From positions 1 to 64,000 of the IMG/VR virus record IMGVR_UViG_3300017917_003822: DNA of 64,000 bases. One strand, written 5' to 3'. This document shows positions 13,961 through 21,387 of this stretch, piece by piece. A program made the position numbers and the translations under genes. How positions within the stretch are numbered: position 1 is the stretch's first letter; each line of letters starts with the position of its first letter. The notes beneath the pieces are model-generated. The model did no database searches and was not told where the DNA came from. It saw only the letters and a program-made list of their open reading frames with translations.

Positions 13961-16900
13961 ATGGCAAATAAGGTAAAAATAGACTACTCACAGTTTAGAG
14001 CATCTGGAGTTTATACGTTAGAATTTGACGCATCACAAAATGTTATTCTAACATCTCAAACTATCAGATTGGTTGTAGGTTTCTCTAATAGGGGGCCTTT
14101 CAACACTCCGGTCTATATCCCAGACGTAACAACTCTTATATCTATTTTTGGTGACATAGACAGATCACTAGAAAATAAAGGATCTTTCTTTCAGAGATCA
14201 ATCTTAACTTGTTTAAATACTGGTCCAGTCTTTGCATTAAATCTATTAAGATTAAATGACGACGAAGAATCTGCTGATCCAGATAGAGTTACGTATCAAT
14301 CATATTCTGTTGATACAGAGGAAGCTAACGGTGTTGTAACAAACAGACTTTATTCCTCGTATTATAACAAGGAAAGATTTTGGTTCGCTGACCCGAACTA
14401 CTTCCTTGCAACATTAAGCGTTGCTGATCAGGGTAAACTTTTCAATTTAACAAACCTTGGAAAATCCCCTATGAGTATAATTGTTAGAAAGTCTACGGAT
14501 TCTTCTAGACCACTCAGAGGTTATGATATTTTCGCAATTGACTGGTATGGCGCTGATAATGTGCCAAGTTTTATGCATCCTTACGACTACATCTCTGATT
14601 ATTTCATAGATGTTATTGCTGTTTTTGGAGATTGGACTAATTATCAGGCTCTTGCAATAGATCCTAAATGGAGCACGTATTTCACGAATAACGGGTTTAT
14701 CAAGAGTAGAATAGATCAATTCTTAGCAGATCCTGACGTTTCTATAGTTACTTCCGTGACCGGATGTATAATTCCAGATTTTGTCGATCTTAATGGAGTC
14801 AATCAGTATATCCAGACTCTTATTAATAACGGAACCCCTTCAACAGGACTATTCTGTGCTATTGACGAACAAGCATTTGATGATATTTGTCAGAATCCTT
14901 CCAAGATAGATTTGGTTGGTAACCATTTAATTGACGAACTATCAGGCGATAGGGACTTAGCTACCCCGAGAATTAACTTCCTAAGTTATGACCAGGTTTT
15001 AGTAGCTGATTATTTATATTCACAAAACGTTGTTGGTGTTACTGGAGCTACTGGATTTAACAGTGCAACCGGAGCAACCGTTTACACTACTGGAGCTAAA
15101 GTTGGTACACTTTTCACATTAACTGGCTCTGCTGGTACAACAGCAGGGGTTGCTTATCAGTCTTTTGAGGCTTATAATCCTAATGCTTATGATGGAGGTT
15201 TACATTATCTTCAAACATCTGGAACTTATGGTACAACTGCTGGTTATATGCAGAATACAGCGGATGTAAATGAGCTTAAAACTTTCCTAAGTGTTACTTC
15301 TTCTGATGATCAGAAATTCATACTAGGTGTGGTTTCTGGATACACCGGAGGATTAACCGGATCTTTAATAAACCAATTTGCTGAAGCTGATATAGTTAAA
15401 CTTAAAGTAACTGGTACTAGAGAGATTGGTGGAGCGCTTAGAATTTTCTTCACCCACCCATTAGATACCTCTTTTTATAGATCTCAGGGTATAACTGTTA
15501 CTCCTACCTACAATTTAACATCTTACAATACTGGTGCTTCCGGAAGTAATCAACCTTTCTATACCGATTCTTATCAATTTGGTAACTCTGACTATCTGGA
15601 TATAACAAGTGTTTCTACACCTAATGGCGTTACTGGTCCAGGTGCTCCTCTTGGAGTTTCCAATGTTATAGTTGCTTATAATGCTTCGGATTTATATCAG
15701 GATAATAAATATTCAGAAATAAATGACGGTGATCTTGCATGGACGGATTCAACAGGAACTCAAGTTAGATACCTAGGATTCGAAGAAACTGTAGATAGAG
15801 ATCAATTCAATCTTGTTTACACTAGGGCTTTCAGTAATGTTGATAGAGATGATGCTACAATCACAAACATACCTGCTTTTGGTACAACCTATGCTTCCGA
15901 TAATATTGGTTATCCGGTAGATGCACAAAACTTTGATATAGTATCACAAGAAGGATCAATTAATCAATTTGTAGATTGTACAAGAATAGATGTTACTACA
16001 TTCACTGTTGGTCTTGATTCGAACGGTAATGTTCCTTTCTCTGTAGGTGATTTGGTAGTTTCGACTGATCTTGATATTTGCGATCCTGCAACAGGAAACA
16101 GACAAAACAGATTGGCTAAAATAACTTCTGTGTCTAGAACAACAACAGCTGGTTTATATAGAGTAGTCTCAGCTAGACCTGTACTTTACTATTCGACCGC
16201 TAATGGAGTTAGAGTTCAGAAATTCCTATCTATTGCTCAATTTACAAGATCATTCGATTTCACTTATCTTTCAGGATTTACCATGACTGATTGGCATAGA
16301 CCTAACGGAAGTGATGCTAGAATATCTGAGATTTTAGATGTTATGTACAATACAAACGTAGCTAAAACATTAGCTTCTAAGGATGTTATTTCCTTCAGAT
16401 ATATTGTAGATACGTTCTCTGGACAGATTTTACCTAATTCTAAATATCAGCTTAGTAGACTTGCTAAATTAAGACAACAAGCACTTGCTATAATAAATGC
16501 ACCTTCGATGGCTCAATTTAGAAGTAGCACTGATCCTAGATTTACTGATGCACCAACAGCATCTAATCCATATCCTAAGTTAAATACAGCTTATATAGCT
16601 GAAGGAGGTAATTTATCTCTTAATCCTTCATACACATTCAGCTTACCTACTGAAGAAGATGGATCTAAATTCTGTGGATTCTATTCACCTTATATTACGG
16701 TTAGAGAATCAAACAGAAATATAGACGTTCCTCCGGCAGCTTACGTTTCTAATAACTTTTTAAGAAAATTTGCTAACGGAGAACCTTATGCAATCATCGC
16801 TGGACAGAAAAGAGGGGTAATAAGCGGATCTAATGTAGTTGGTGTTGAATACGACTTCACCGATGAGGACAGAGGAAATTTAGAACCTTTCGGAATAAAT

Positions 16901-17314
16901 CCTATTATAAAGAGAAGAGGAGTTGGTGTGGTTATATTTGGTAACCAAACTGCTTATCAGCAAGTTAACTCAGCATTCAATCTAGTTCACGTAAGAGACC
17001 TTTTAATTAGTATAGAAAGCGACGTACAGGAGATTTTATCTAATTATCTATTTGATTTCAATGACGACTCGATCAGACTTGAAATTAAAACTCTAGTTGA
17101 TAACTATTTAGATGGTGTAAGAGCAGGAGGTGGTATTTATGCTTACCAGACTATTATGGATGCATCTAACAATACTCCAGCTATTATAGATATGAATATG
17201 GGTATAATCGACGTTATCATCGAACCTGCTAGAGGAATCCAGAAATTCATCAATAGAATCACTGTTACTAGAACAGGTGGAATCGCAGCGGGTGGATTTG
17301 TACAGTTTGTATAA
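13961..17314 (+). CDS. gp18: Tail sheath protein with a large G/T/S-rich insertion
   Basis: SGVYTLEFD, GPFNTPV, PPAAYV, INPI...VIFGNQT, VRDLLI, NNTPAIID. Confidence 0.95.
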   Translation: MANKVKIDYSQFRASGVYTLEFDASQNVILTSQTIRLVVGFSNRGPFNTPVYIPDVTTLISIFGDIDRSLENKGSFFQRSILTCLNTGPVFALNLLRLNDDEESADPDRVTYQSYSVDTEEANGVVTNRLYSSYYNKERFWFADPNYFLATLSVADQGKLFNLTNLGKSPMSIIVRKSTDSSRPLRGYDIFAIDWYGADNVPSFMHPYDYISDYFIDVIAVFGDWTNYQALAIDPKWSTYFTNNGFIKSRIDQFLADPDVSIVTSVTGCIIPDFVDLNGVNQYIQTLINNGTPSTGLFCAIDEQAFDDICQNPSKIDLVGNHLIDELSGDRDLATPRINFLSYDQVLVADYLYSQNVVGVTGATGFNSATGATVYTTGAKVGTLFTLTGSAGTTAGVAYQSFEAYNPNAYDGGLHYLQTSGTYGTTAGYMQNTADVNELKTFLSVTSSDDQKFILGVVSGYTGGLTGSLINQFAEADIVKLKVTGTREIGGALRIFFTHPLDTSFYRSQGITVTPTYNLTSYNTGASGSNQPFYTDSYQFGNSDYLDITSVSTPNGVTGPGAPLGVSNVIVAYNASDLYQDNKYSEINDGDLAWTDSTGTQVRYLGFEETVDRDQFNLVYTRAFSNVDRDDATITNIPAFGTTYASDNIGYPVDAQNFDIVSQEGSINQFVDCTRIDVTTFTVGLDSNGNVPFSVGDLVVSTDLDICDPATGNRQNRLAKITSVSRTTTAGLYRVVSARPVLYYSTANGVRVQKFLSIAQFTRSFDFTYLSGFTMTDWHRPNGSDARISEILDVMYNTNVAKTLASKDVISFRYIVDTFSGQILPNSKYQLSRLAKLRQQALAIINAPSMAQFRSSTDPRFTDAPTASNPYPKLNTAYIAEGGNLSLNPSYTFSLPTEEDGSKFCGFYSPYITVRESNRNIDVPPAAYVSNNFLRKFANGEPYAIIAGQKRGVISGSNVVGVEYDFTDEDRGNLEPFGINPIIKRRGVGVVIFGNQTAYQQVNSAFNLVHVRDLLISIESDVQEILSNYLFDFNDDSIRLEIKTLVDNYLDGVRAGGGIYAYQTIMDASNNTPAIIDMNMGIIDVIIEPARGIQKFINRITVTRTGGIAAGGFVQFV

Positions 17315-17359: not shown

Positions 17360-17914
17360 ATGGCAGGACTATCACATTTTCAAAATTCACTTTCAGCTAT
17401 AAACAAATTTGAACCTGTTTATCTGAACCAGTTCGAGGTAACAATTATACCTCCTGCTGCTGTTGCTGGTGGTGAAATATTACTCCAACATGTTAGCAAA
17501 GTTAGTGGACTTTCTTTGGATAAAAATCCTGGTGTTACTAGCCAGAAATATAAGTTCGCTAAAAGGAACTATGCGGGAGCTAAGCCAGAAAACACTTTTA
17601 TGGATGTGAGTATAAGCTTTAGCGTCAATTTAAATGATGCTAATTCGATGTATGTCTTTAAAACATTGAGACAATGGTCTGATTTAATTTACAATCCATT
17701 AACCGGTGCAATGGGTCTTAAAAATGATTATACGGGTACTATTGTTATCTCGATATTTAATAAACAGGGAGATGTTTTTAGAAGAATAACATGTAGAGAT
17801 TGCTTCCCGACAAAACCTATTTCACCAATGAATCTGAACTATACATCTACGGATCTGTATAAAATAGATGATATGACTTGGGCGGTTGATTACTGGGAAG
17901 ATTTATTCCTATAA
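17360..17914 (+). CDS. gp19: Tail tube protein, copy 1 (gp19-like)
   Basis: Follows the sheath gene; NQFEV, RQWSDLIYNP, CFP, DYW. Confidence 0.85.
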   Translation: MAGLSHFQNSLSAINKFEPVYLNQFEVTIIPPAAVAGGEILLQHVSKVSGLSLDKNPGVTSQKYKFAKRNYAGAKPENTFMDVSISFSVNLNDANSMYVFKTLRQWSDLIYNPLTGAMGLKNDYTGTIVISIFNKQGDVFRRITCRDCFPTKPISPMNLNYTSTDLYKIDDMTWAVDYWEDLFL

Positions 17915-17929
17915 AATAAGAAAAAATAA

Positions 17930-18505
17930 ATGGCAGGATTACCACATTTTACAAATTCTAGAGCTGCAATAAGCAATTTCGAACCAGTTTATTTAAACCA
18001 ATTTGAGGTTCTAATAAATCCTCCAGCTGGTATAGTTGATGCTTCCACAACCTTTAATGGCGAAGGAATATTAGCTCAGCAAGTTAAATCTATAACAGGA
18101 TTGGCTGTAGATATTGCACCTGCTCAGACTATTAATCAGAATTATAAATTTGCTACCAGACGATATGCTGGTGGTGAGCCTTCTCAGAGTGATATGACTC
18201 TGACCATGGAGTTTGAAGTCAATTTAAACGATGCAAATTCGATGACCGTTTATAAAATTCTTAGACAATGGTCAGATTTAATCTATAATCCACTTACCGG
18301 TGCTATGGGTATAAAATCTGATTATGTTGGTTCTATGTCTATATCTATTTTTAACAAGAGAGGTGACGTTTTCAGAAGAATTAGAATACCTTCGTGTTTT
18401 TTAAGTGAAGCGATAAACCCGATGGAACTTGATTATGAACAAGCAACTATCTATAGCATAACTACAAGCTGGGTGTGTGACTATTGGGAAGATTTATTCC
18501 TATAA
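17930..18505 (+). CDS. gp19: Tail tube protein, copy 2 (gp19-like)
   Basis: Clear paralog of 17360..17914 (FEPVYLNQFEV, RQWSDLIYNPLTGAMG, DYWEDLFL). Confidence 0.85.
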   Translation: MAGLPHFTNSRAAISNFEPVYLNQFEVLINPPAGIVDASTTFNGEGILAQQVKSITGLAVDIAPAQTINQNYKFATRRYAGGEPSQSDMTLTMEFEVNLNDANSMTVYKILRQWSDLIYNPLTGAMGIKSDYVGSMSISIFNKRGDVFRRIRIPSCFLSEAINPMELDYEQATIYSITTSWVCDYWEDLFL

Positions 18506-18594: not shown

Positions 18595-19689
18595 ATGGAT
18601 AACATATCACCAGAAGAAATTCTAAAGAGAAAAGAAATTGACGGGGGAATCCAGTATGATGACCCAGTTGAGACCGGTCCAGATCCCGGGAAAGATGAAC
18701 CTAACTTAGCAATACAACCGGAGCAATTTAAGAAATCCGAACCAGGTATTGTCTCAGAAACACCGAATTTAAAAATGGAGCAACCAGCTAAAAATATATA
18801 TTCGGAACAACCAGTGAATAGCTTTGGTAAAGCACAATCTGTCTCGCCGGCTTTTGATACTGGATGGAAAAATTTACCTGTTGAAATATTACCTTCGAAG
18901 GGAATGTTTTATCCCGAGGGTACTAAATTAGCAATAAGAGCCGCTGAAGTTAGAGAAATCAGACATTTTTCCACTATTGACGATGACGATAGATTGGATA
19001 TAGAGGATAAGTTAAGCTATATCTTGGATAGATGTTTAAGAATGGATTTTCCTAACGAAGGTGTGGTTTCATATTTGGACCTTAAACAAGAGGACAGGTT
19101 TTTTATAATAATGGCTATTAGGGATCTAACTTTTGTAAAGGGTGAGAATTCAATTATATTACAACTAGATAAGACATGTAGAGAAACTCCTGATTGCCCA
19201 TACAGGGATGGTATAGAATTAAGAACCGGAGTTTTAAGTTCCTATGAGCTTGATAATAAAATATTAGAATATTACAACCCGGAGAGTAGATCCTTTATAT
19301 TTGATGTTAGAAAAATAGGTAAAAAAATAGAAATGTTCATCCCAAGTATCGGAGTAACTAAGGCTATTTCTAAGTTCGTATCCGATATGGCAAAAAAAGG
19401 AACTGATATCGACGAAGGATTTCTTAAGATAGCACCATTCCTTTTTGAAGAATGGAGAGACTTGACTTCCGATAAGATATCACTTAGAATGAGGGAAAGT
19501 GATTATTGGACTAAGGAGGAATATAGCTTATATTTCGAATTGTCAGAAAAAATAAAATTAGGAACTGAGTTAACTGTTAAGCAAAAGTGCGCAGTGTGCG
19601 GTGATGAGGAGGTCACCGCAGGCATCAACTTTCCCAGCGGGATCAGATCTCTTTTCGTTATTTCAGATATCTTTAGAGAACTTCTTTGA
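18595..19689 (+). CDS. Baseplate hub assembly/tail chaperone (T4 gp26-like)
   Basis: LPSKGMFY, DRFFIIMAIRDLTF, two Cys pairs (CRETPDC, CAVC); lies between tube and tape measure genes. Confidence 0.75.
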   Translation: MDNISPEEILKRKEIDGGIQYDDPVETGPDPGKDEPNLAIQPEQFKKSEPGIVSETPNLKMEQPAKNIYSEQPVNSFGKAQSVSPAFDTGWKNLPVEILPSKGMFYPEGTKLAIRAAEVREIRHFSTIDDDDRLDIEDKLSYILDRCLRMDFPNEGVVSYLDLKQEDRFFIIMAIRDLTFVKGENSIILQLDKTCRETPDCPYRDGIELRTGVLSSYELDNKILEYYNPESRSFIFDVRKIGKKIEMFIPSIGVTKAISKFVSDMAKKGTDIDEGFLKIAPFLFEEWRDLTSDKISLRMRESDYWTKEEYSLYFELSEKIKLGTELTVKQKCAVCGDEEVTAGINFPSGIRSLFVISDIFRELL

Positions 19690-19861
19690 TATCAAGTTTA
19701 GATTGTGGCACGAACATAAAATAGATCCCGATTGGTTAGAATCTATTCCGTTCTATGAATATCAGATATGGTTAGACAAGCTTAACGCAGCAATTGAACA
19801 GGAAAATGCAGAGAAACAGAGTGAAGGTGGTGTTAAACAGATATTTAACCTAACCAGATAA
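19601..19861 (+). CDS. gp51-like hub assembly protein, possibly made by +1 frameshift from the upstream gene
   Basis: SLENFFDIKFRLWHEHKIDPDWLESIPFYEYQIWL resembles T4-like gp51; overlaps the gp26-like gene by 89 nt in the +1 frame. Confidence 0.65.
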   Translation: MMRRSPQASTFPAGSDLFSLFQISLENFFDIKFRLWHEHKIDPDWLESIPFYEYQIWLDKLNAAIEQENAEKQSEGGVKQIFNLTR

Positions 19862-19884
19862 AATATATACAGTAATTATAAAAC

Positions 19885-21387
19885 ATGGCCATAGATCAGA
19901 AACTTATATCCTCTCTATTAGATTTATCTAGAAACGTAGATAAACTCTCCGGTGACATTAAAAAGAATACGGAGACGACAACCGAACTTGTAGCTACGCA
20001 AGAAAAAAGTGTAGATAGTAACAAGGAAATCGGGAAAGTAGCTGAAAGTATAAAGGGTCTGGATTTAAAAAGTTTAAAGGGGGATTTCTCTGAATTAACT
20101 AAAAGCATCAGTGGACTTGATTTTAAGAATCTTTCCACTGATCTTAAATCATTAGACTTTAAGGGACTTTCAAATAGCATCAAATCGCTGGATCTTAAAA
20201 GCGTAACTAGCGATCTTAAAAATTTAGACTTCAAGAATCTATCTAATACAATCAAGGATTTTGATGTAAAAAACATAGCTAGCACGATAAAGGACCAGGG
20301 AATAAAAAACGTAGTCTCTGGATCTGTTGGGGGATTATTGAAAAAAGGTAAGGGTATACTTGGTTCCTTTGCTGATGGCGGAGATGTTAACAAGACTGGT
20401 AACTATCTTGTTGGTGAAAAGGGACCGGAAGTAGTTAAGTTAAATGCAGGATCTGTCGTTATACCCAATAATATTTTAAAAGAAAGGCAGGATATTTTAA
20501 AAAAATTAGGAGCTGACGCTCCTAGCGAAAAGGAAATATCAAGAAAAAGAAATGAATTACTCCTAAGTGATCCTGATTATTATTCGGATGAACCTGGTTG
20601 GTTGGAGGAGGACATTAATTCATATCTGGAGGGTCTTCAGGGAAAATCAACATCACTATTCACCCCGGAGGATTTAAAGAAGCTAAGCAAACCAGTGGAT
20701 AATAAAGCTGAAGCCTTGGTAAATCCTTTATCGACCCCAGCAAAAAATGACAAGAAAGAAAAAAATAAGAAGGACGAACCCAAATTAAAGGAAAAGAAGG
20801 ACGGACTATTTTCTAAAATTTTTGGTAAGAGTGATAAGAGTGAAATTAAAGGATCTGAGATTGTATCTAATACACCATCTAAGGATAAAGTTTTTGATAA
20901 GAATAGCATATTGACTCAGGGATCTAGTTTACTGAAAGGTGCCAGCGGTCTTTTGAATAATGAATTTGGTGGGAAGCTGAATATGGCGGGTGATATACTA
21001 AGTAAAGGAACAGAACTGGGCAAAAAAATAAAAATGCCTTCAATCGAGACCAGAACTCCTGAATTAAAAACTCCGGAAATTAAAACTGACATAAAGAAAC
21101 TTTCACCCCAACCCCAACCTAAGCCATCCAAGGTTGCTGAAACTAAAAATGAATCCCAATCTCAGGAAGTTCTTAAAAATGAAATAATTGAAACAGGTTC
21201 AGCTAAATCTGAAGCTAAAACTCCTGAATCTACAAATTCTAATCAGCAAGGAACCAATCCAACAATGACGTCCAAGGATATTGAGGAAATGAAAGCTGCA
21301 CTAGTTAGAATAGCTTCGCTGTTGGAGGGCCCGTTGAATGTTGCTCCTATGGAGAGACCATTTAGACCCGATTCAAGAAGAATATAA
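19885..21387 (+). CDS. Tape measure / baseplate hub protein (putative)
   Basis: Position after the chaperones; 12-aa LDFKxLSxxxKS repeats; FADGG...LVGEKGPEVV motif common in tape measure proteins. Confidence 0.6.
   Translation: MAIDQKLISSLLDLSRNVDKLSGDIKKNTETTTELVATQEKSVDSNKEIGKVAESIKGLDLKSLKGDFSELTKSISGLDFKNLSTDLKSLDFKGLSNSIKSLDLKSVTSDLKNLDFKNLSNTIKDFDVKNIASTIKDQGIKNVVSGSVGGLLKKGKGILGSFADGGDVNKTGNYLVGEKGPEVVKLNAGSVVIPNNILKERQDILKKLGADAPSEKEISRKRNELLLSDPDYYSDEPGWLEEDINSYLEGLQGKSTSLFTPEDLKKLSKPVDNKAEALVNPLSTPAKNDKKEKNKKDEPKLKEKKDGLFSKIFGKSDKSEIKGSEIVSNTPSKDKVFDKNSILTQGSSLLKGASGLLNNEFGGKLNMAGDILSKGTELGKKIKMPSIETRTPELKTPEIKTDIKKLSPQPQPKPSKVAETKNESQSQEVLKNEIIETGSAKSEAKTPESTNSNQQGTNPTMTSKDIEEMKAALVRIASLLEGPLNVAPMERPFRPDSRRI

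What the first reader, a model, noticed from the sequence alone, without database searches (positions are those of the whole stretch)
19601..19861. Candidate +1 programmed frameshift joining gp26-like and gp51-like tail chaperones
Seen: between tube and tape-measure genes, the gp51-like sequence lies in the +1 frame overlapping the end of the gp26-like gene. There is no start codon near its conserved part (SLENFF...) and no A-rich leader of the kind other genes have. Three +1-compatible sites are in the overlap: TTT CCC A (19630), CTT TTC G (19651) and CTT TGA (19684..19689), the last matching the prfB shift codon pair. Known: lambda G/GT-type chaperones at this gene position use -1 shifts (-2 in Mu). 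Inference: a G/GT-like fusion made by a +1 (or -2) shift in a T4-like phage.
Basis: partly seen in the sequence, partly recalled or inferred. Interest (0 to 1): 0.68.

Follow-up and report, generated by a model that had tools for sequence, protein, structure and literature searches.

The report
Conserved +1 frameshift in tail chaperone
A 270-kb freshwater phage appears to make a short and a long version of one tail-assembly helper protein by letting some ribosomes slip one base forward, which suggests phage T4's long-puzzling proteins gp26 and gp51 are the same kind of pair made from two separate genes.

Summary
Gene 18595-19689 lies between two tube genes and a tape-measure-like gene. Profile and fold comparisons place it in the T4 gp26/gp51 family. 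The +1 frame, open from 19574 to 19861, encodes the C-terminal piece that T4 gp51 has and gp26 lacks.

In every relative examined the extension is in the +1 frame:
- 157 loci of the window's clade
- 79 loci of a second clade
- ten deeper lineages, including phages PAU, PTm1, pT24, MA9V-1, MaF61 and Lak

About a quarter of variants have a +1-frame stop at 19625-19627 and no start codon before the conserved peptide. This rules out independent initiation and confines the shift to 19628-19689.

Two sites are invariant. UUU_CCC (19630) is favoured: nucleotide conservation begins there, +1 stops are avoided after it, and an in-frame UUU_C recurs in 10 of 11 lineages. CUU_UUC (19651; +1 or -2) remains possible. 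CUU_UGA (19684) is rejected.

Side finding: in 78 of 78 cyanophage-type loci gp26 ends in U_UUU_UUC, with the short gp51 in the -1 frame. T4 has two separate paralogous genes. No protein-level evidence exists.

The parts
17360..17914 (+). Tail tube-like gene 1 (context)
   Evidence: phrog_32623 at E 2e-38; tail tube PHROGs at E 3e-10.
17930..18505 (+). Tail tube-like gene 2, a paralog (context)
   Evidence: phrog_32623 at E 4e-30; tail tube PHROGs.
18595..19689 (+). 0-frame gene giving the short product (364 aa). It is a gp26-family hub/tail assembly chaperone homolog with a disordered N-terminal ~88 aa, cysteine pairs C195/C201 and C332/C335, and a C-terminal ...ELL tail. The stop is TGA at 19687.
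   Evidence: ORF. hhalign N-domain versus the cyanophage/T4 gp26 profile: probability 89.6%, E 2e-6, against 0.2% for a reversed control. AF2 model plus Foldseek hits to T4-like baseplate hub proteins, E 1e-6 to 1e-3. The C-terminus resembles that of T4 gp26.
19625..19627 (+). Position where 25 of 97 unique family variants, and several variants of a second clade, carry a +1-frame stop. This sets the 5' limit of the shift window.
19630..19636 (+). Preferred shift site UUU_CCC_A. P-site tRNA-Phe would re-pair from UUU to UUC, with the rare CCC codon waiting in the A site.
   Evidence: Zero changes at all six positions across the clade, and invariant in a second clade. The conservation island begins here. 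CCC is 10% of Pro codons. An in-frame UUU_C recurs in 10 of 11 deep lineages while the next amino acid varies P/Q/R/L.
19651..19657 (+). Alternative shift site CUU_UUC_G: either a +1 slip of tRNA-Leu CUU>UUU, or a -2 slip of tRNA-Phe UUC>UUU.
   Evidence: Zero changes. NUU_UU(C/U) is present in 9 of 11 deep lineages. It aligns with the FF codons that form the cyanophage -1 heptamer.
19631..19861 (+). +1-frame coding part of the long product: a gp51-type C-terminal extension, 75 codons if the shift is at 19630 or 68 if at 19651. The stop is TAA at 19859-19861. The long product is 421 aa (422 if the shift is -2).
   Evidence: phrog_634 at E 3e-6. hhalign of the extension alone: probability 96.7%, E 5e-10. 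Third-position variability switches to the +1 frame.
19684..19689 (+). CUU_UGA, a prfB-like codon pair at the end of the 0 frame. Rejected as the site.
   Evidence: In several relatives TGA is replaced by a sense codon, and the CUU varies. The conserved gp51-homologous +1 peptide (SLENFF) lies upstream of it.
19666..19693 (+). Possible hairpin 3' of the sites (GAUAUC/GAUAUC stem). Not supported as a stimulator.
   Evidence: -6.6 kcal/mol, z -0.8 against shuffles. The region is too invariant for a covariation test.
19885..21387 (+). Tape-measure-like gene (context)
   Evidence: Weak tape-measure PHROG hits, E 5e-6 to 2e-3. It occupies the position directly after the chaperone gene.

Best explanation
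Gene 18595-19689 encodes a non-structural tail/hub assembly chaperone of the T4 gp26/gp51 family. Most ribosomes read it to the TGA at 19687 and make a 364-aa gp26-like protein. A fraction shift into the +1 frame shortly before the end and continue to 19861. They make a 421-aa protein whose extra C-terminal domain is homologous to the part of T4 gp51 that gp26 lacks.

The most likely event is a +1 slip of peptidyl-tRNA-Phe from UUU to UUC at 19630-19633, while the rare codon CCC waits in the A site. A slip at CUU_UUC (19651; +1 or -2) is the alternative, and both sites may contribute.

By position (tube, chaperone, tape measure) and logic (two products sharing an N-terminal part, the longer one rarer), the pair would work like lambda G/GT.

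Shown: the gene arrangement, its conservation, the homologies, and the lack of an alternative way to translate the extension. Inferred: that the shift is ribosomal, its exact site, its direction (+1 versus -2), its efficiency, and the chaperone function.
For: 1. Frame conservation.
- The extension is in the +1 frame with an open overlap in 5 of 5 annotated isolates (PAU, PTm1, pT24, MA9V-1, MaF61).
- The same holds in 6 of 6 huge-phage records, including Lak.
- It holds in 79 of 79 IMG/VR loci, in 157 loci once metagenome contigs are added, and in 79 of 79 loci of a second clade.

2. No independent start.
- 20 of 50 unique variants open the +1 ORF only 9 codons before the conserved peptide, with no ATG, GTG or TTG.
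- In those variants the first start codon is often 62 codons into a 68-codon extension.
- The window's GTG/ATG at 19601/19604 fall inside the conserved CxxCG codons and lie upstream of the +1 stop seen in relatives.

3. Dual-coding signature.
- 0-frame third positions change about 7 times per site upstream of 19630.
- They change 0 times in TTT CCC and CTT TTC, and rarely up to 19686. From there on variability sits at +1-frame third positions.
- The second clade shows the same pattern.
- Related-phage contigs in three metagenomes align only from 19629 to about 19716, without indels.

4. The +1 frame is kept open after 19630.
- 0 of 97 unique variants have a +1 stop in the next 19 codons.
- An A at 19644, which would create a +1 TAA, occurs only together with the rare CGA codon, in three sequence contexts.

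5. Homology.
- Window-lineage fusion profile versus cyanophage/T4 gp26-gp51 profile: probability 98-99%, E 1e-14 to 1e-18, over nearly the full length.
- The N-domain and the extension are each significant separately.
- The fold matches T4-like hub proteins.
- T4 gp26 and gp51 are paralogs (PF12322 for both; BLASTP E 2e-6). Only gp51 carries the extension.

6. Family precedent. 78 of 78 cyanophage-type loci have an invariant U_UUU_UUC heptamer one codon before the gp26 stop, with the gp51-like ORF in the -1 frame.

7. Literature. -1, -2 and +1 shifts are all known for phage tail-assembly gene pairs (PMC5009743).
Against: - There is no protein, ribosome-profiling or reporter evidence. One metatranscriptome holds two contigs inside the gene but none over the site.
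- No stimulatory element was found. The downstream hairpin is not better than shuffles, and the conserved GGAGG at 19608-19612 is 17 nt from the first site.
- Neither candidate site is avoided in frame elsewhere in the genome: TTT_CCC 8 observed against 9 expected, CTT_TTC 44 against 25. So neither is strongly shift-prone on its own.
- The site cannot be pinned down. Between the two sites some changes are synonymous in the 0 frame but radical in the +1 frame: TCT>TCC gives L>P, GGG>GGA gives G>D, and GCN variants give R/P/H in the second clade. This fits a shift at 19651 or a tolerant linker.
- Two lineages (MA9V-1, L011) lack UUU_C at the first position. Two others (pT24, Lak) lack NUU_UUC at the second.
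- The lambda-like function is by analogy only.
Confidence: 0.85

Rival explanations
1. The long product and the frame are the same, but the slip happens at CUU_UUC_G (19651-19657). It would be either a +1 slip of tRNA-Leu (CUU>UUU, junction ...IRSL|SLFQ...) or a -2 slip of tRNA-Phe (UUC>UUU, junction ...IRSLF|SLFQ...).
For: - The site is invariant.
- NUU_UU(C/U) is present in 9 of 11 deep lineages and in the second clade, with AUU or GUU.
- It aligns with the FF codons that form the -1 heptamer in cyanophages and with T4 gp26 'GLKEFF'.
- With UCU_CUU_UUC, both tRNAs can re-pair perfectly after a -2 shift (CUC, UUU).
- Between the two sites, some 0-frame-synonymous changes are radical in the +1 frame.
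Against: - Conservation and depressed synonymous change already begin at 19630, not 19651.
- +1 stops are avoided between the two sites through coupled changes.
- CTT_TTC occurs 44 times in frame in other long ORFs, more than expected.
- UUC is not a slow A-site codon.
- pT24 and Lak lack this site.
Confidence: 0.35
2. There is no recoding. The 86-codon ORF is a separate small gene, translated from GTG 19601 or ATG 19604, or by re-initiation after the upstream stop.
For: - The window itself has GTG and ATG at 19601/19604.
- GenBank annotators called small separate ORFs in PAU, PTm1, pT24, MA9V-1 and MaF61.
- One T4-like phage (Cygsa01) has a TAATG coupled start for its short gp51.
Against: - 25 of 97 variants have a +1 stop downstream of those codons (19625-27) and no start before the conserved peptide. 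The second clade is the same.
- The annotated small ORFs of the isolates begin inside or after the conserved peptide.
- The +1 relation would not be preserved in every lineage if the two genes were independent.
- There is no A-rich leader or Shine-Dalgarno sequence for the ORF.
Confidence: 0.05
3. A prfB-type +1 shift at the last sense codon, CUU_UGA (19684-19689).
For: The codon pair is identical to the prfB shift site and is present in most close relatives. Lak phages probably do use a stop-adjacent site, GAU_UUU_UAA.
Against: - In L063, L066-L069, L074 and L086, TGA is replaced by GGA or CGA, with a later TAA. CUU varies to UUU, AUU or CUA.
- The +1 peptide upstream of it (SLFQISLENFF) is conserved and homologous to cyanophage and T4 gp51.
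- Variation in 19657-19686 is at +1-frame third positions.
- There is no Shine-Dalgarno sequence 3 nt upstream.
Confidence: 0.03
4. An artefact or decay: an assembly indel, a pseudogene, or RNA polymerase slippage rather than ribosomal frameshifting.
For: Short T and C runs lie at both sites. The window comes from a metagenome assembly.
Against: - The arrangement is the same in cultured isolates and in hundreds of independent assemblies.
- A gap-free contig from another study spans 18628-20048, and no insertions or deletions were reported in four runs.
- Both frames are under purifying selection.
- Runs of 3-4 identical bases are far shorter than known transcriptional slippage sites (my own knowledge).
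Confidence: 0.03

Closest known systems
Lambda gpG/gpGT tail assembly chaperones and their counterparts in other long-tailed phages (Xu, Hendrix and Duda 2004, as reviewed in PMC5009743)
   Same: The gene sits between the tube and tape-measure genes. Two products share an N-terminal part, and the longer one is made by a programmed shift near the 3' end. The second ORF has no start of its own. The arrangement is conserved despite low sequence identity.
   Different: The frame is +1 (or -2) rather than -1. The protein family differs (T4 gp26/gp51, PF12322-like, with cysteine pairs) and there is no Pfam match to known chaperone families. The short product is 364 aa, much larger than gpG. Binding partners were not tested.
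Phage T4 gp26 and gp51 (hub assembly chaperone/catalyst; PMC3004832)
   Same: Homologous. The 0-frame product matches gp26, including the CxxC pair and the ...ELL C-terminus. The frameshift product matches gp51, including its extra C-terminal piece.
   Different: In T4 the two are separate, divergently transcribed, full-length paralogous genes. The FF codons of gene 26 are the non-slippery TTC TTT. Here one gene gives both forms. PF12322 itself does not score the window protein.
Short 'gp51' of cyanophages and marine T4-like phages (PMC3037559)
   Same: The same family and the same layout: gp26 is followed directly by a short gp51-like ORF that covers only the C-terminal piece. The slip site lies at an equivalent place in the protein.
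   Different: There the ORF is in the -1 frame, behind an invariant U_UUU_UUC heptamer one codon before the stop (78 of 78 loci). Many of those phages also have an ATG right after the stop.
Phage Mu (-2) and haloarchaeal myovirus HSTV-2 (likely +1) tail-assembly shifts (PMC5009743)
   Same: They reach the +1 frame in the tail chaperone gene of a contractile-tailed virus.
   Different: No sequence relationship was tested. The slip sequences differ.
prfB (CUU_UGA) and Listeria phage PSA/A118/A500 tsh (CCC_UGA) +1 shifts
   Same: A +1 slip of a P-site tRNA onto an overlapping near-cognate codon, helped by a slow A-site codon.
   Different: The slow codon here would be a rare sense codon (CCC), not a stop. 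No Shine-Dalgarno stimulator is at the right distance. The stop-adjacent CUU_UGA in the window is not the conserved site.

Membership tests
T4 gp26/gp51 family (Pfam PF12322, T4_baseplate) | Scores above the Pfam gathering threshold for PF12322 | tested here: not met
   No PF12322 hit for the window protein even at E<=10, and none in the whole 270-kb genome. T4 gp26 and gp51 score 216 and 178 bits.
T4 gp26/gp51 family (Pfam PF12322, T4_baseplate) | Profile-level homology of the N-terminal domain to gp26/gp51 | tested here: met
   hhalign, N-domain only: probability 89.6%, E 2e-6, 208 columns, against 0.2% for a reversed control. Full fusion: probability 98-99%.
T4 gp26/gp51 family (Pfam PF12322, T4_baseplate) | Same fold | tested here: met
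   AF2 model (core pLDDT 80-90). Foldseek against BFVD hits T4-like 'baseplate hub subunit / hub assembly protein' entries at E 1e-6 to 1e-3, TM about 0.45-0.6 by target.
T4 gp26/gp51 family (Pfam PF12322, T4_baseplate) | gp51-specific C-terminal extension | tested here: met
   The +1 ORF matches phrog_634 positions 59-115, the region that matches T4 gp51 residues beyond about 200. hhalign of the extension alone: 96.7%, E 5e-10.
G/GT-type frameshifted tail assembly chaperone pair | Located between the major tube gene and the tape-measure gene | tested here: met
   The order is sheath, tube, tube, this gene, tape-measure-like gene. The tape-measure assignment rests on weak PHROG hits.
G/GT-type frameshifted tail assembly chaperone pair | A second ORF overlaps the 3' end, lacks its own start, and keeps a conserved frame relation and slip sequence | tested here: met
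G/GT-type frameshifted tail assembly chaperone pair | Two proteins are actually made in a fixed ratio and are absent from virions | not testable with these tools
   No proteomic or reporter data are available. RNA contigs do not cover the site.
G/GT-type frameshifted tail assembly chaperone pair | The shared part binds the tape measure; the extension binds the tube or initiator | not tested
The claim rests on analogy.
G/GT-type frameshifted tail assembly chaperone pair | Sequence membership in a described tail-chaperone Pfam or PHROG family | tested here: not met
   The only hits are phrog_36717 (unknown function) and phrog_634 (hub assembly catalyst).
prfB-type +1 site | A conserved CUU_UGA with a Shine-Dalgarno sequence 3 nt upstream | tested here: not met
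   CUU_UGA is present in the window but not conserved. No Shine-Dalgarno sequence is adjacent. Conserved +1 coding lies upstream of it.

The most novel reading that the evidence does not exclude
The gp26/gp51 family is the G/GT equivalent of T4-related and many jumbo contractile-tailed phages, and the way the long form is made has changed repeatedly during evolution. Three solutions are seen: a +1 slip at UUU_C in a large clade of freshwater, marine and gut jumbo and megaphages (including PAU, PTm1 and Lak); a -1 slip at U_UUU_UUC in cyanophages and Aeh1-type phages; and gene duplication into two full-length genes in T4 itself. This would remove T4 as the stated exception to the conserved tail-assembly frameshift. 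[quoted passage not shown]
Probability: 0.7. Interest if true: 0.72.

Novelty: new variant of a known kind. Interest (0 to 1): 0.62.

Why it matters
Reviews state that the G-T tail-assembly frameshift is conserved in long-tailed phages 'except T4' (PMC5009743). [quoted passage not shown]

This locus shows one gene producing both a gp26-like and a gp51-like form by recoding. It therefore offers a testable explanation for both statements.

It also corrects the annotation of a core structural module in hundreds of jumbo-phage and cyanophage genomes. There the extension is currently called as a truncated small ORF, or reported as missing (Aeh1).

Finally, it gives a natural series in which homologous genes use +1 recoding, -1 recoding or duplication. 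That series is useful for studying how frameshift sites evolve and what sets their direction.

Tried and rejected
- Complex prediction with both tube paralogs and the 68-aa extension gave no answer (score 0.00). This is not evidence either way.
- Direct family scans for gp26 found nothing: Pfam at E<=10 and PF12322 over the whole genome. BLASTP against T4 gp26 and gp51 was not significant. Homology needed profiles and folds.
- The downstream hairpin 19666-19693 is no better than shuffled sequence (z -0.8). The alignment consensus kept only its inner part, and the region is too invariant for covariation.
- In-frame counts of TTT_CCC and CTT_TTC in other long ORFs of the genome showed no avoidance, so this did not discriminate between the sites.
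- blastn of the region against phage records found nothing.
- IMG/VR scans with PAU and PTm1 proteins returned only those phages themselves. A ten-sequence alignment was too divergent to search with.
- Seven full-text searches found no paper that links gp26/gp51, or the 'baseplate hub assembly catalyst', to frameshifting. PRFect and the P1 and Goslar papers were irrelevant. Subscription journals are not covered, so priority cannot be excluded.
- I considered SD-like stimulation by the conserved GAGGAGG at 19606-19612. The spacing is wrong for either site, and the genes here have A-rich leaders without a Shine-Dalgarno sequence.
Full report
WHAT IS THERE

The window is the first 64 kb of a 270,629-bp virus record (36% G+C, estimated 99% complete). 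The region reads as follows:
- sheath, 13961-17314
- two paralogous tube-like genes, 17360-17914 and 17930-18505
- a 364-codon gene, 18595-19689, ending in TGA
- a tape-measure-like gene, 19885-21387

The +1 frame relative to the 364-codon gene is open from 19574 to the TAA at 19859-19861. The +1 ORF matches phrog_634, 'baseplate hub assembly catalyst' (T4 gp51), at E 3e-6. The 364-aa protein matches only phrog_36717 (unknown function) and no Pfam family.

THE ARRANGEMENT IS CONSERVED

tblastn finds the 364-aa protein at 23-34% identity in jumbo and megaphages: Sphingomonas PAU, Tenacibaculum PTm1/PTm5/pT24, Chryseobacterium MA9V-1/2, Flavobacterium MaF61, the Prevotella Lak phages and six huge uncultured phages.

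- In the five annotated isolates a small 'hypothetical' ORF follows the gene, every time in the +1 frame. That frame is open 104-128 nt back into the upstream gene, and it encodes a conserved peptide upstream of the annotated start.
- The six unannotated huge-phage records show the same layout.
- In IMG/VR, 79 of 79 complete loci at 52-79% identity have the +1 layout. Adding metagenome contigs gives 157 loci and 97 unique sequences.
- A second clade around LR756502 gives 79 of 79. The 80th locus was an ORF-picking error of my script.
- In public runs the stretch is held in pond, lake, river, salt-marsh, wastewater and soil metagenomes from 17 studies. A contig from another study spans 18628-20048 without gaps, and no insertions or deletions were reported.

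So this is not an assembly error or a decaying gene.

INDEPENDENT INITIATION IS EXCLUDED AS THE CONSERVED MECHANISM

- In 25 of 97 unique variants, and in several of the second clade and in LR756500/LR756501, a +1-frame stop lies at the position of 19625-19627. That is downstream of the window's GTG/ATG at 19601/19604.
- In those variants there is no ATG, GTG or TTG before the conserved peptide. The first one is often 62 codons into a 68-codon extension, or there is none at all.
- The window's GTG/ATG are a by-product of the conserved CxxCG(D) codons in the 0 frame.

The shift window is therefore 19628-19689.

WHERE THE SHIFT HAPPENS

Parsimony counts on a tree built from the flanks show:
- about 7 changes per 0-frame third position upstream of 19630
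- zero changes at all six positions of TTT CCC (19630-35) and of CTT TTC (19651-56)
- few third-position changes in between
- from 19657 on, variation almost only at 0-frame first positions, which are +1-frame third positions. An example is AGA/GGA, which is R/G in the 0 frame but silent in +1.

So the +1 frame is translated well before the 0-frame stop. The +1 peptide SLFQISLENFF aligns with the cyanophage and T4 gp51 sequence. In several relatives TGA is replaced by a sense codon, and the preceding CUU varies. The prfB-like CUU_UGA is therefore rejected.

Four observations favour UUU_CCC over CUU_UUC:
1. The nucleotide conservation island starts sharply at 19630 in this clade and in the second clade. 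In the metagenomes, contigs of diverged relatives align only from 19629 to about 19716.
2. No +1 stop occurs in the 19 codons after 19631 in any of the 97 variants. The 0-frame-synonymous third-position A at 19644, which would create a +1 TAA, is seen only together with a change of the next codon from AGA to the rare CGA, in three sequence contexts.
3. Rare codons are maintained here (CCC 10% of Pro, GGG 10% of Gly, CTC 5% of Leu).
4. An in-frame UUU followed by C recurs in 10 of 11 deep lineages while the encoded next residue varies: CCC, CAA, CGA, and CUA in MA9V-1 at the second position. That is nucleotide-level conservation, not amino-acid conservation. A slip of tRNA-Phe from UUU to UUC improves third-base pairing (my own reasoning from wobble rules).

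Four observations argue the other way:
1. Some changes between the two sites are silent in the 0 frame but radical in +1: L>P, G>D, and R/P/H in the second clade.
2. CUU_UUC aligns with the FF codons that form the cyanophage heptamer.
3. UCU_CUU_UUC allows perfect tandem re-pairing after a -2 shift.
4. MA9V-1 and L011 lack UUU_C at the first position, whereas pT24 and Lak lack NUU_UUC at the second.

Lak phages have GAU_UUU_UAA at the 0-frame stop, an obvious +1 site. pT24 has AAA_A. Both fit +1 better than -2.

My estimate is UUU_CCC 55-60%, CUU_UUC about 35% (split between +1 and -2), and something else for the rest. Both sites could contribute, since they feed the same ORF. No stimulator was found, and neither site is avoided elsewhere in the genome. 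The efficiency is therefore probably low, or depends on context not recognised here.

WHAT THE PROTEINS ARE

- T4 gp26 (208 aa) and gp51 (249 aa) both match PF12322 over about 200 residues and match each other (E 2e-6). gp51 alone has about 45 extra C-terminal residues, the part covered by phrog_634.
- The window's 0-frame C-terminus (...KCAVCG...GIRSLFVISDIFRELL) resembles that of T4 gp26 (...KCPECG...IRGLKEFFELL).
- A profile of modelled fusion proteins from the window's lineages was aligned to a profile of cyanophage gp26-gp51 fusions plus T4 gp51. It scores 98-99% probability, E 1e-14 to 1e-18, over residues 98-413 of 421.
- The N-domain alone gives 89.6% (E 2e-6) and the extension alone 96.7% (E 5e-10). 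A reversed control gives 0.2%.
- An AlphaFold model of the 364-aa protein has a confident core (residues 89-344), a disordered N-terminal 88 residues and a low-confidence C-terminal tail. After its own relatives, it hits T4-like 'baseplate hub subunit / hub assembly protein' models in BFVD.

So the short product corresponds to gp26 and the long product to gp51. In T4 both are described as hub assembly chaperones. gp51 is required for assembly but absent from the particle (PMC3004832).

THE WIDER PICTURE (SIDE FINDING)

Sullivan et al. (PMC3037559) noted that cyanophage and marine vibriophage gp51 is only about 20% of the usual length, and that Aeh1 lacks it.

- In S-SSM7, S-RIM8 and Aeh1 the gp26 gene ends ...nnT TTT TTC Gnn stop, and the gp51-like peptide lies in the -1 frame. 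In S-RIM8 the conserved peptide precedes the annotated ATG. In Aeh1 it is unannotated.
- In 78 of 78 IMG/VR cyanophage-type loci the heptamer T_TTT_TTC is invariant, including the third base of the variable preceding codon. The extension is always in the -1 frame, and in several loci a -1-frame stop directly abuts the T run.
- T4 gene 26 encodes the same FF as TTC TTT and is followed by gene 25. Pseudomonas phage Cygsa01 has a TAATG coupled start.

The family thus shows -1 recoding, +1 recoding, coupling, and duplication into two genes. Atkins et al. state that G-T frameshifting is widely conserved 'except T4', and that -1, -2 and +1 are all used in tailed phages (PMC5009743). I found no paper linking gp26/gp51 to frameshifting. 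That search does not cover subscription journals.

VERDICT

It is a new variant of a known kind: a tail-assembly frameshift in a different protein family, reaching the +1 frame. Its added value is that it ties T4 gp26/gp51 to the G/GT principle. What remains inferred is the ribosomal nature of the shift, its exact site, direction and efficiency, and the binding partners.

Noticed in passing
L093-L095 and L097-L176 (cyanophage-type loci); e.g. L094:2660-2700: gp26 of cyanophages and of Aeromonas phage Aeh1 ends in an invariant T_TTT_TTC heptamer one codon before the stop, and the short gp51-like ORF is always in the -1 frame (78 of 78 loci). This looks like an unannotated -1 programmed frameshift. 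Aeh1, reported to lack gp51, encodes the extension in the -1 frame with no start codon.
   Followed up: partly
L001:3384-3560, L002:3336-3506, L003:3396-3533, L004:3396-3518, L005:3306-3527: The small 'hypothetical protein' ORFs annotated after the gp26-like gene are 5'-truncated calls of the +1-frame extension. This applies to MA9V-1 (MA9V1_007), MaF61 (ORF156), PAU (gp94), PTm1 (ORF-023) and pT24 (BPT24_131). The conserved peptide starts upstream of each annotated start.
   Followed up: yes
L007:3270-3300 and L008:3270-3350 (Lak phages): Lak phages lack the NUU_UUC site and have about 27 extra codons before the conserved extension motif. Their 0 frame ends GAT TTT TAA, a run of five T before a stop, which is a plausible relocated +1 site. 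In Lak-B5 the +1 frame contains one TAG (L008:3345), which fits the TAG reassignment reported for Lak phages (my recollection of the Lak phage literature; not checked here).
   Followed up: partly
window 19606-19620: GAG GAG GTC ACC GC, just after the CxxCG codons, is almost invariant at the nucleotide level, including synonymous positions. It contains GGAGG. A similar GAG GAG GTC is present in the second clade and in LR756501. The spacing (17 nt to the first site, 38 nt to the second) does not fit known Shine-Dalgarno stimulators. Its role is unexplained.
   Followed up: no
window 18595-18860: The first ~88 residues of the gp26-like protein are predicted disordered (pLDDT about 30) and poorly conserved, apart from a short N-terminal helix (NISPEEIL...). 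T4 gp26 has no such region.
   Followed up: no
L001, L003-L007, L010 extension C-termini: In the distant relatives the extension ends in a short basic motif such as (K/R)(M/V/I/L)PK..., for example ...FKMPKSPKFK, ...IPKMKR, ...RMPKMKKFW, ...KVPKFKTPKI and ...NIPKI. It could be a docking peptide. The window's clade ends differently (...IFNLTR).
   Followed up: no
window 17360-18505: Two adjacent tube-like paralogs (184 and 191 aa) have near-identical N- and C-termini. One may be the tube proper and the other a tube initiator.
   Followed up: no
window 18600-18778 and 19062-19289: Two contigs of a metatranscriptome run (X20) match inside the gp26-like gene at >=95% identity. This shows presence in an RNA library only. 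Neither contig covers the shift region.
   Followed up: partly
window 19629-19716: In three freshwater metagenomes many short contigs from diverged relatives align only to this ~90-nt island, where depth rises 2- to 5-fold. It is the most conserved nucleotide stretch of the locus and could serve as a marker for this phage group.
   Followed up: partly
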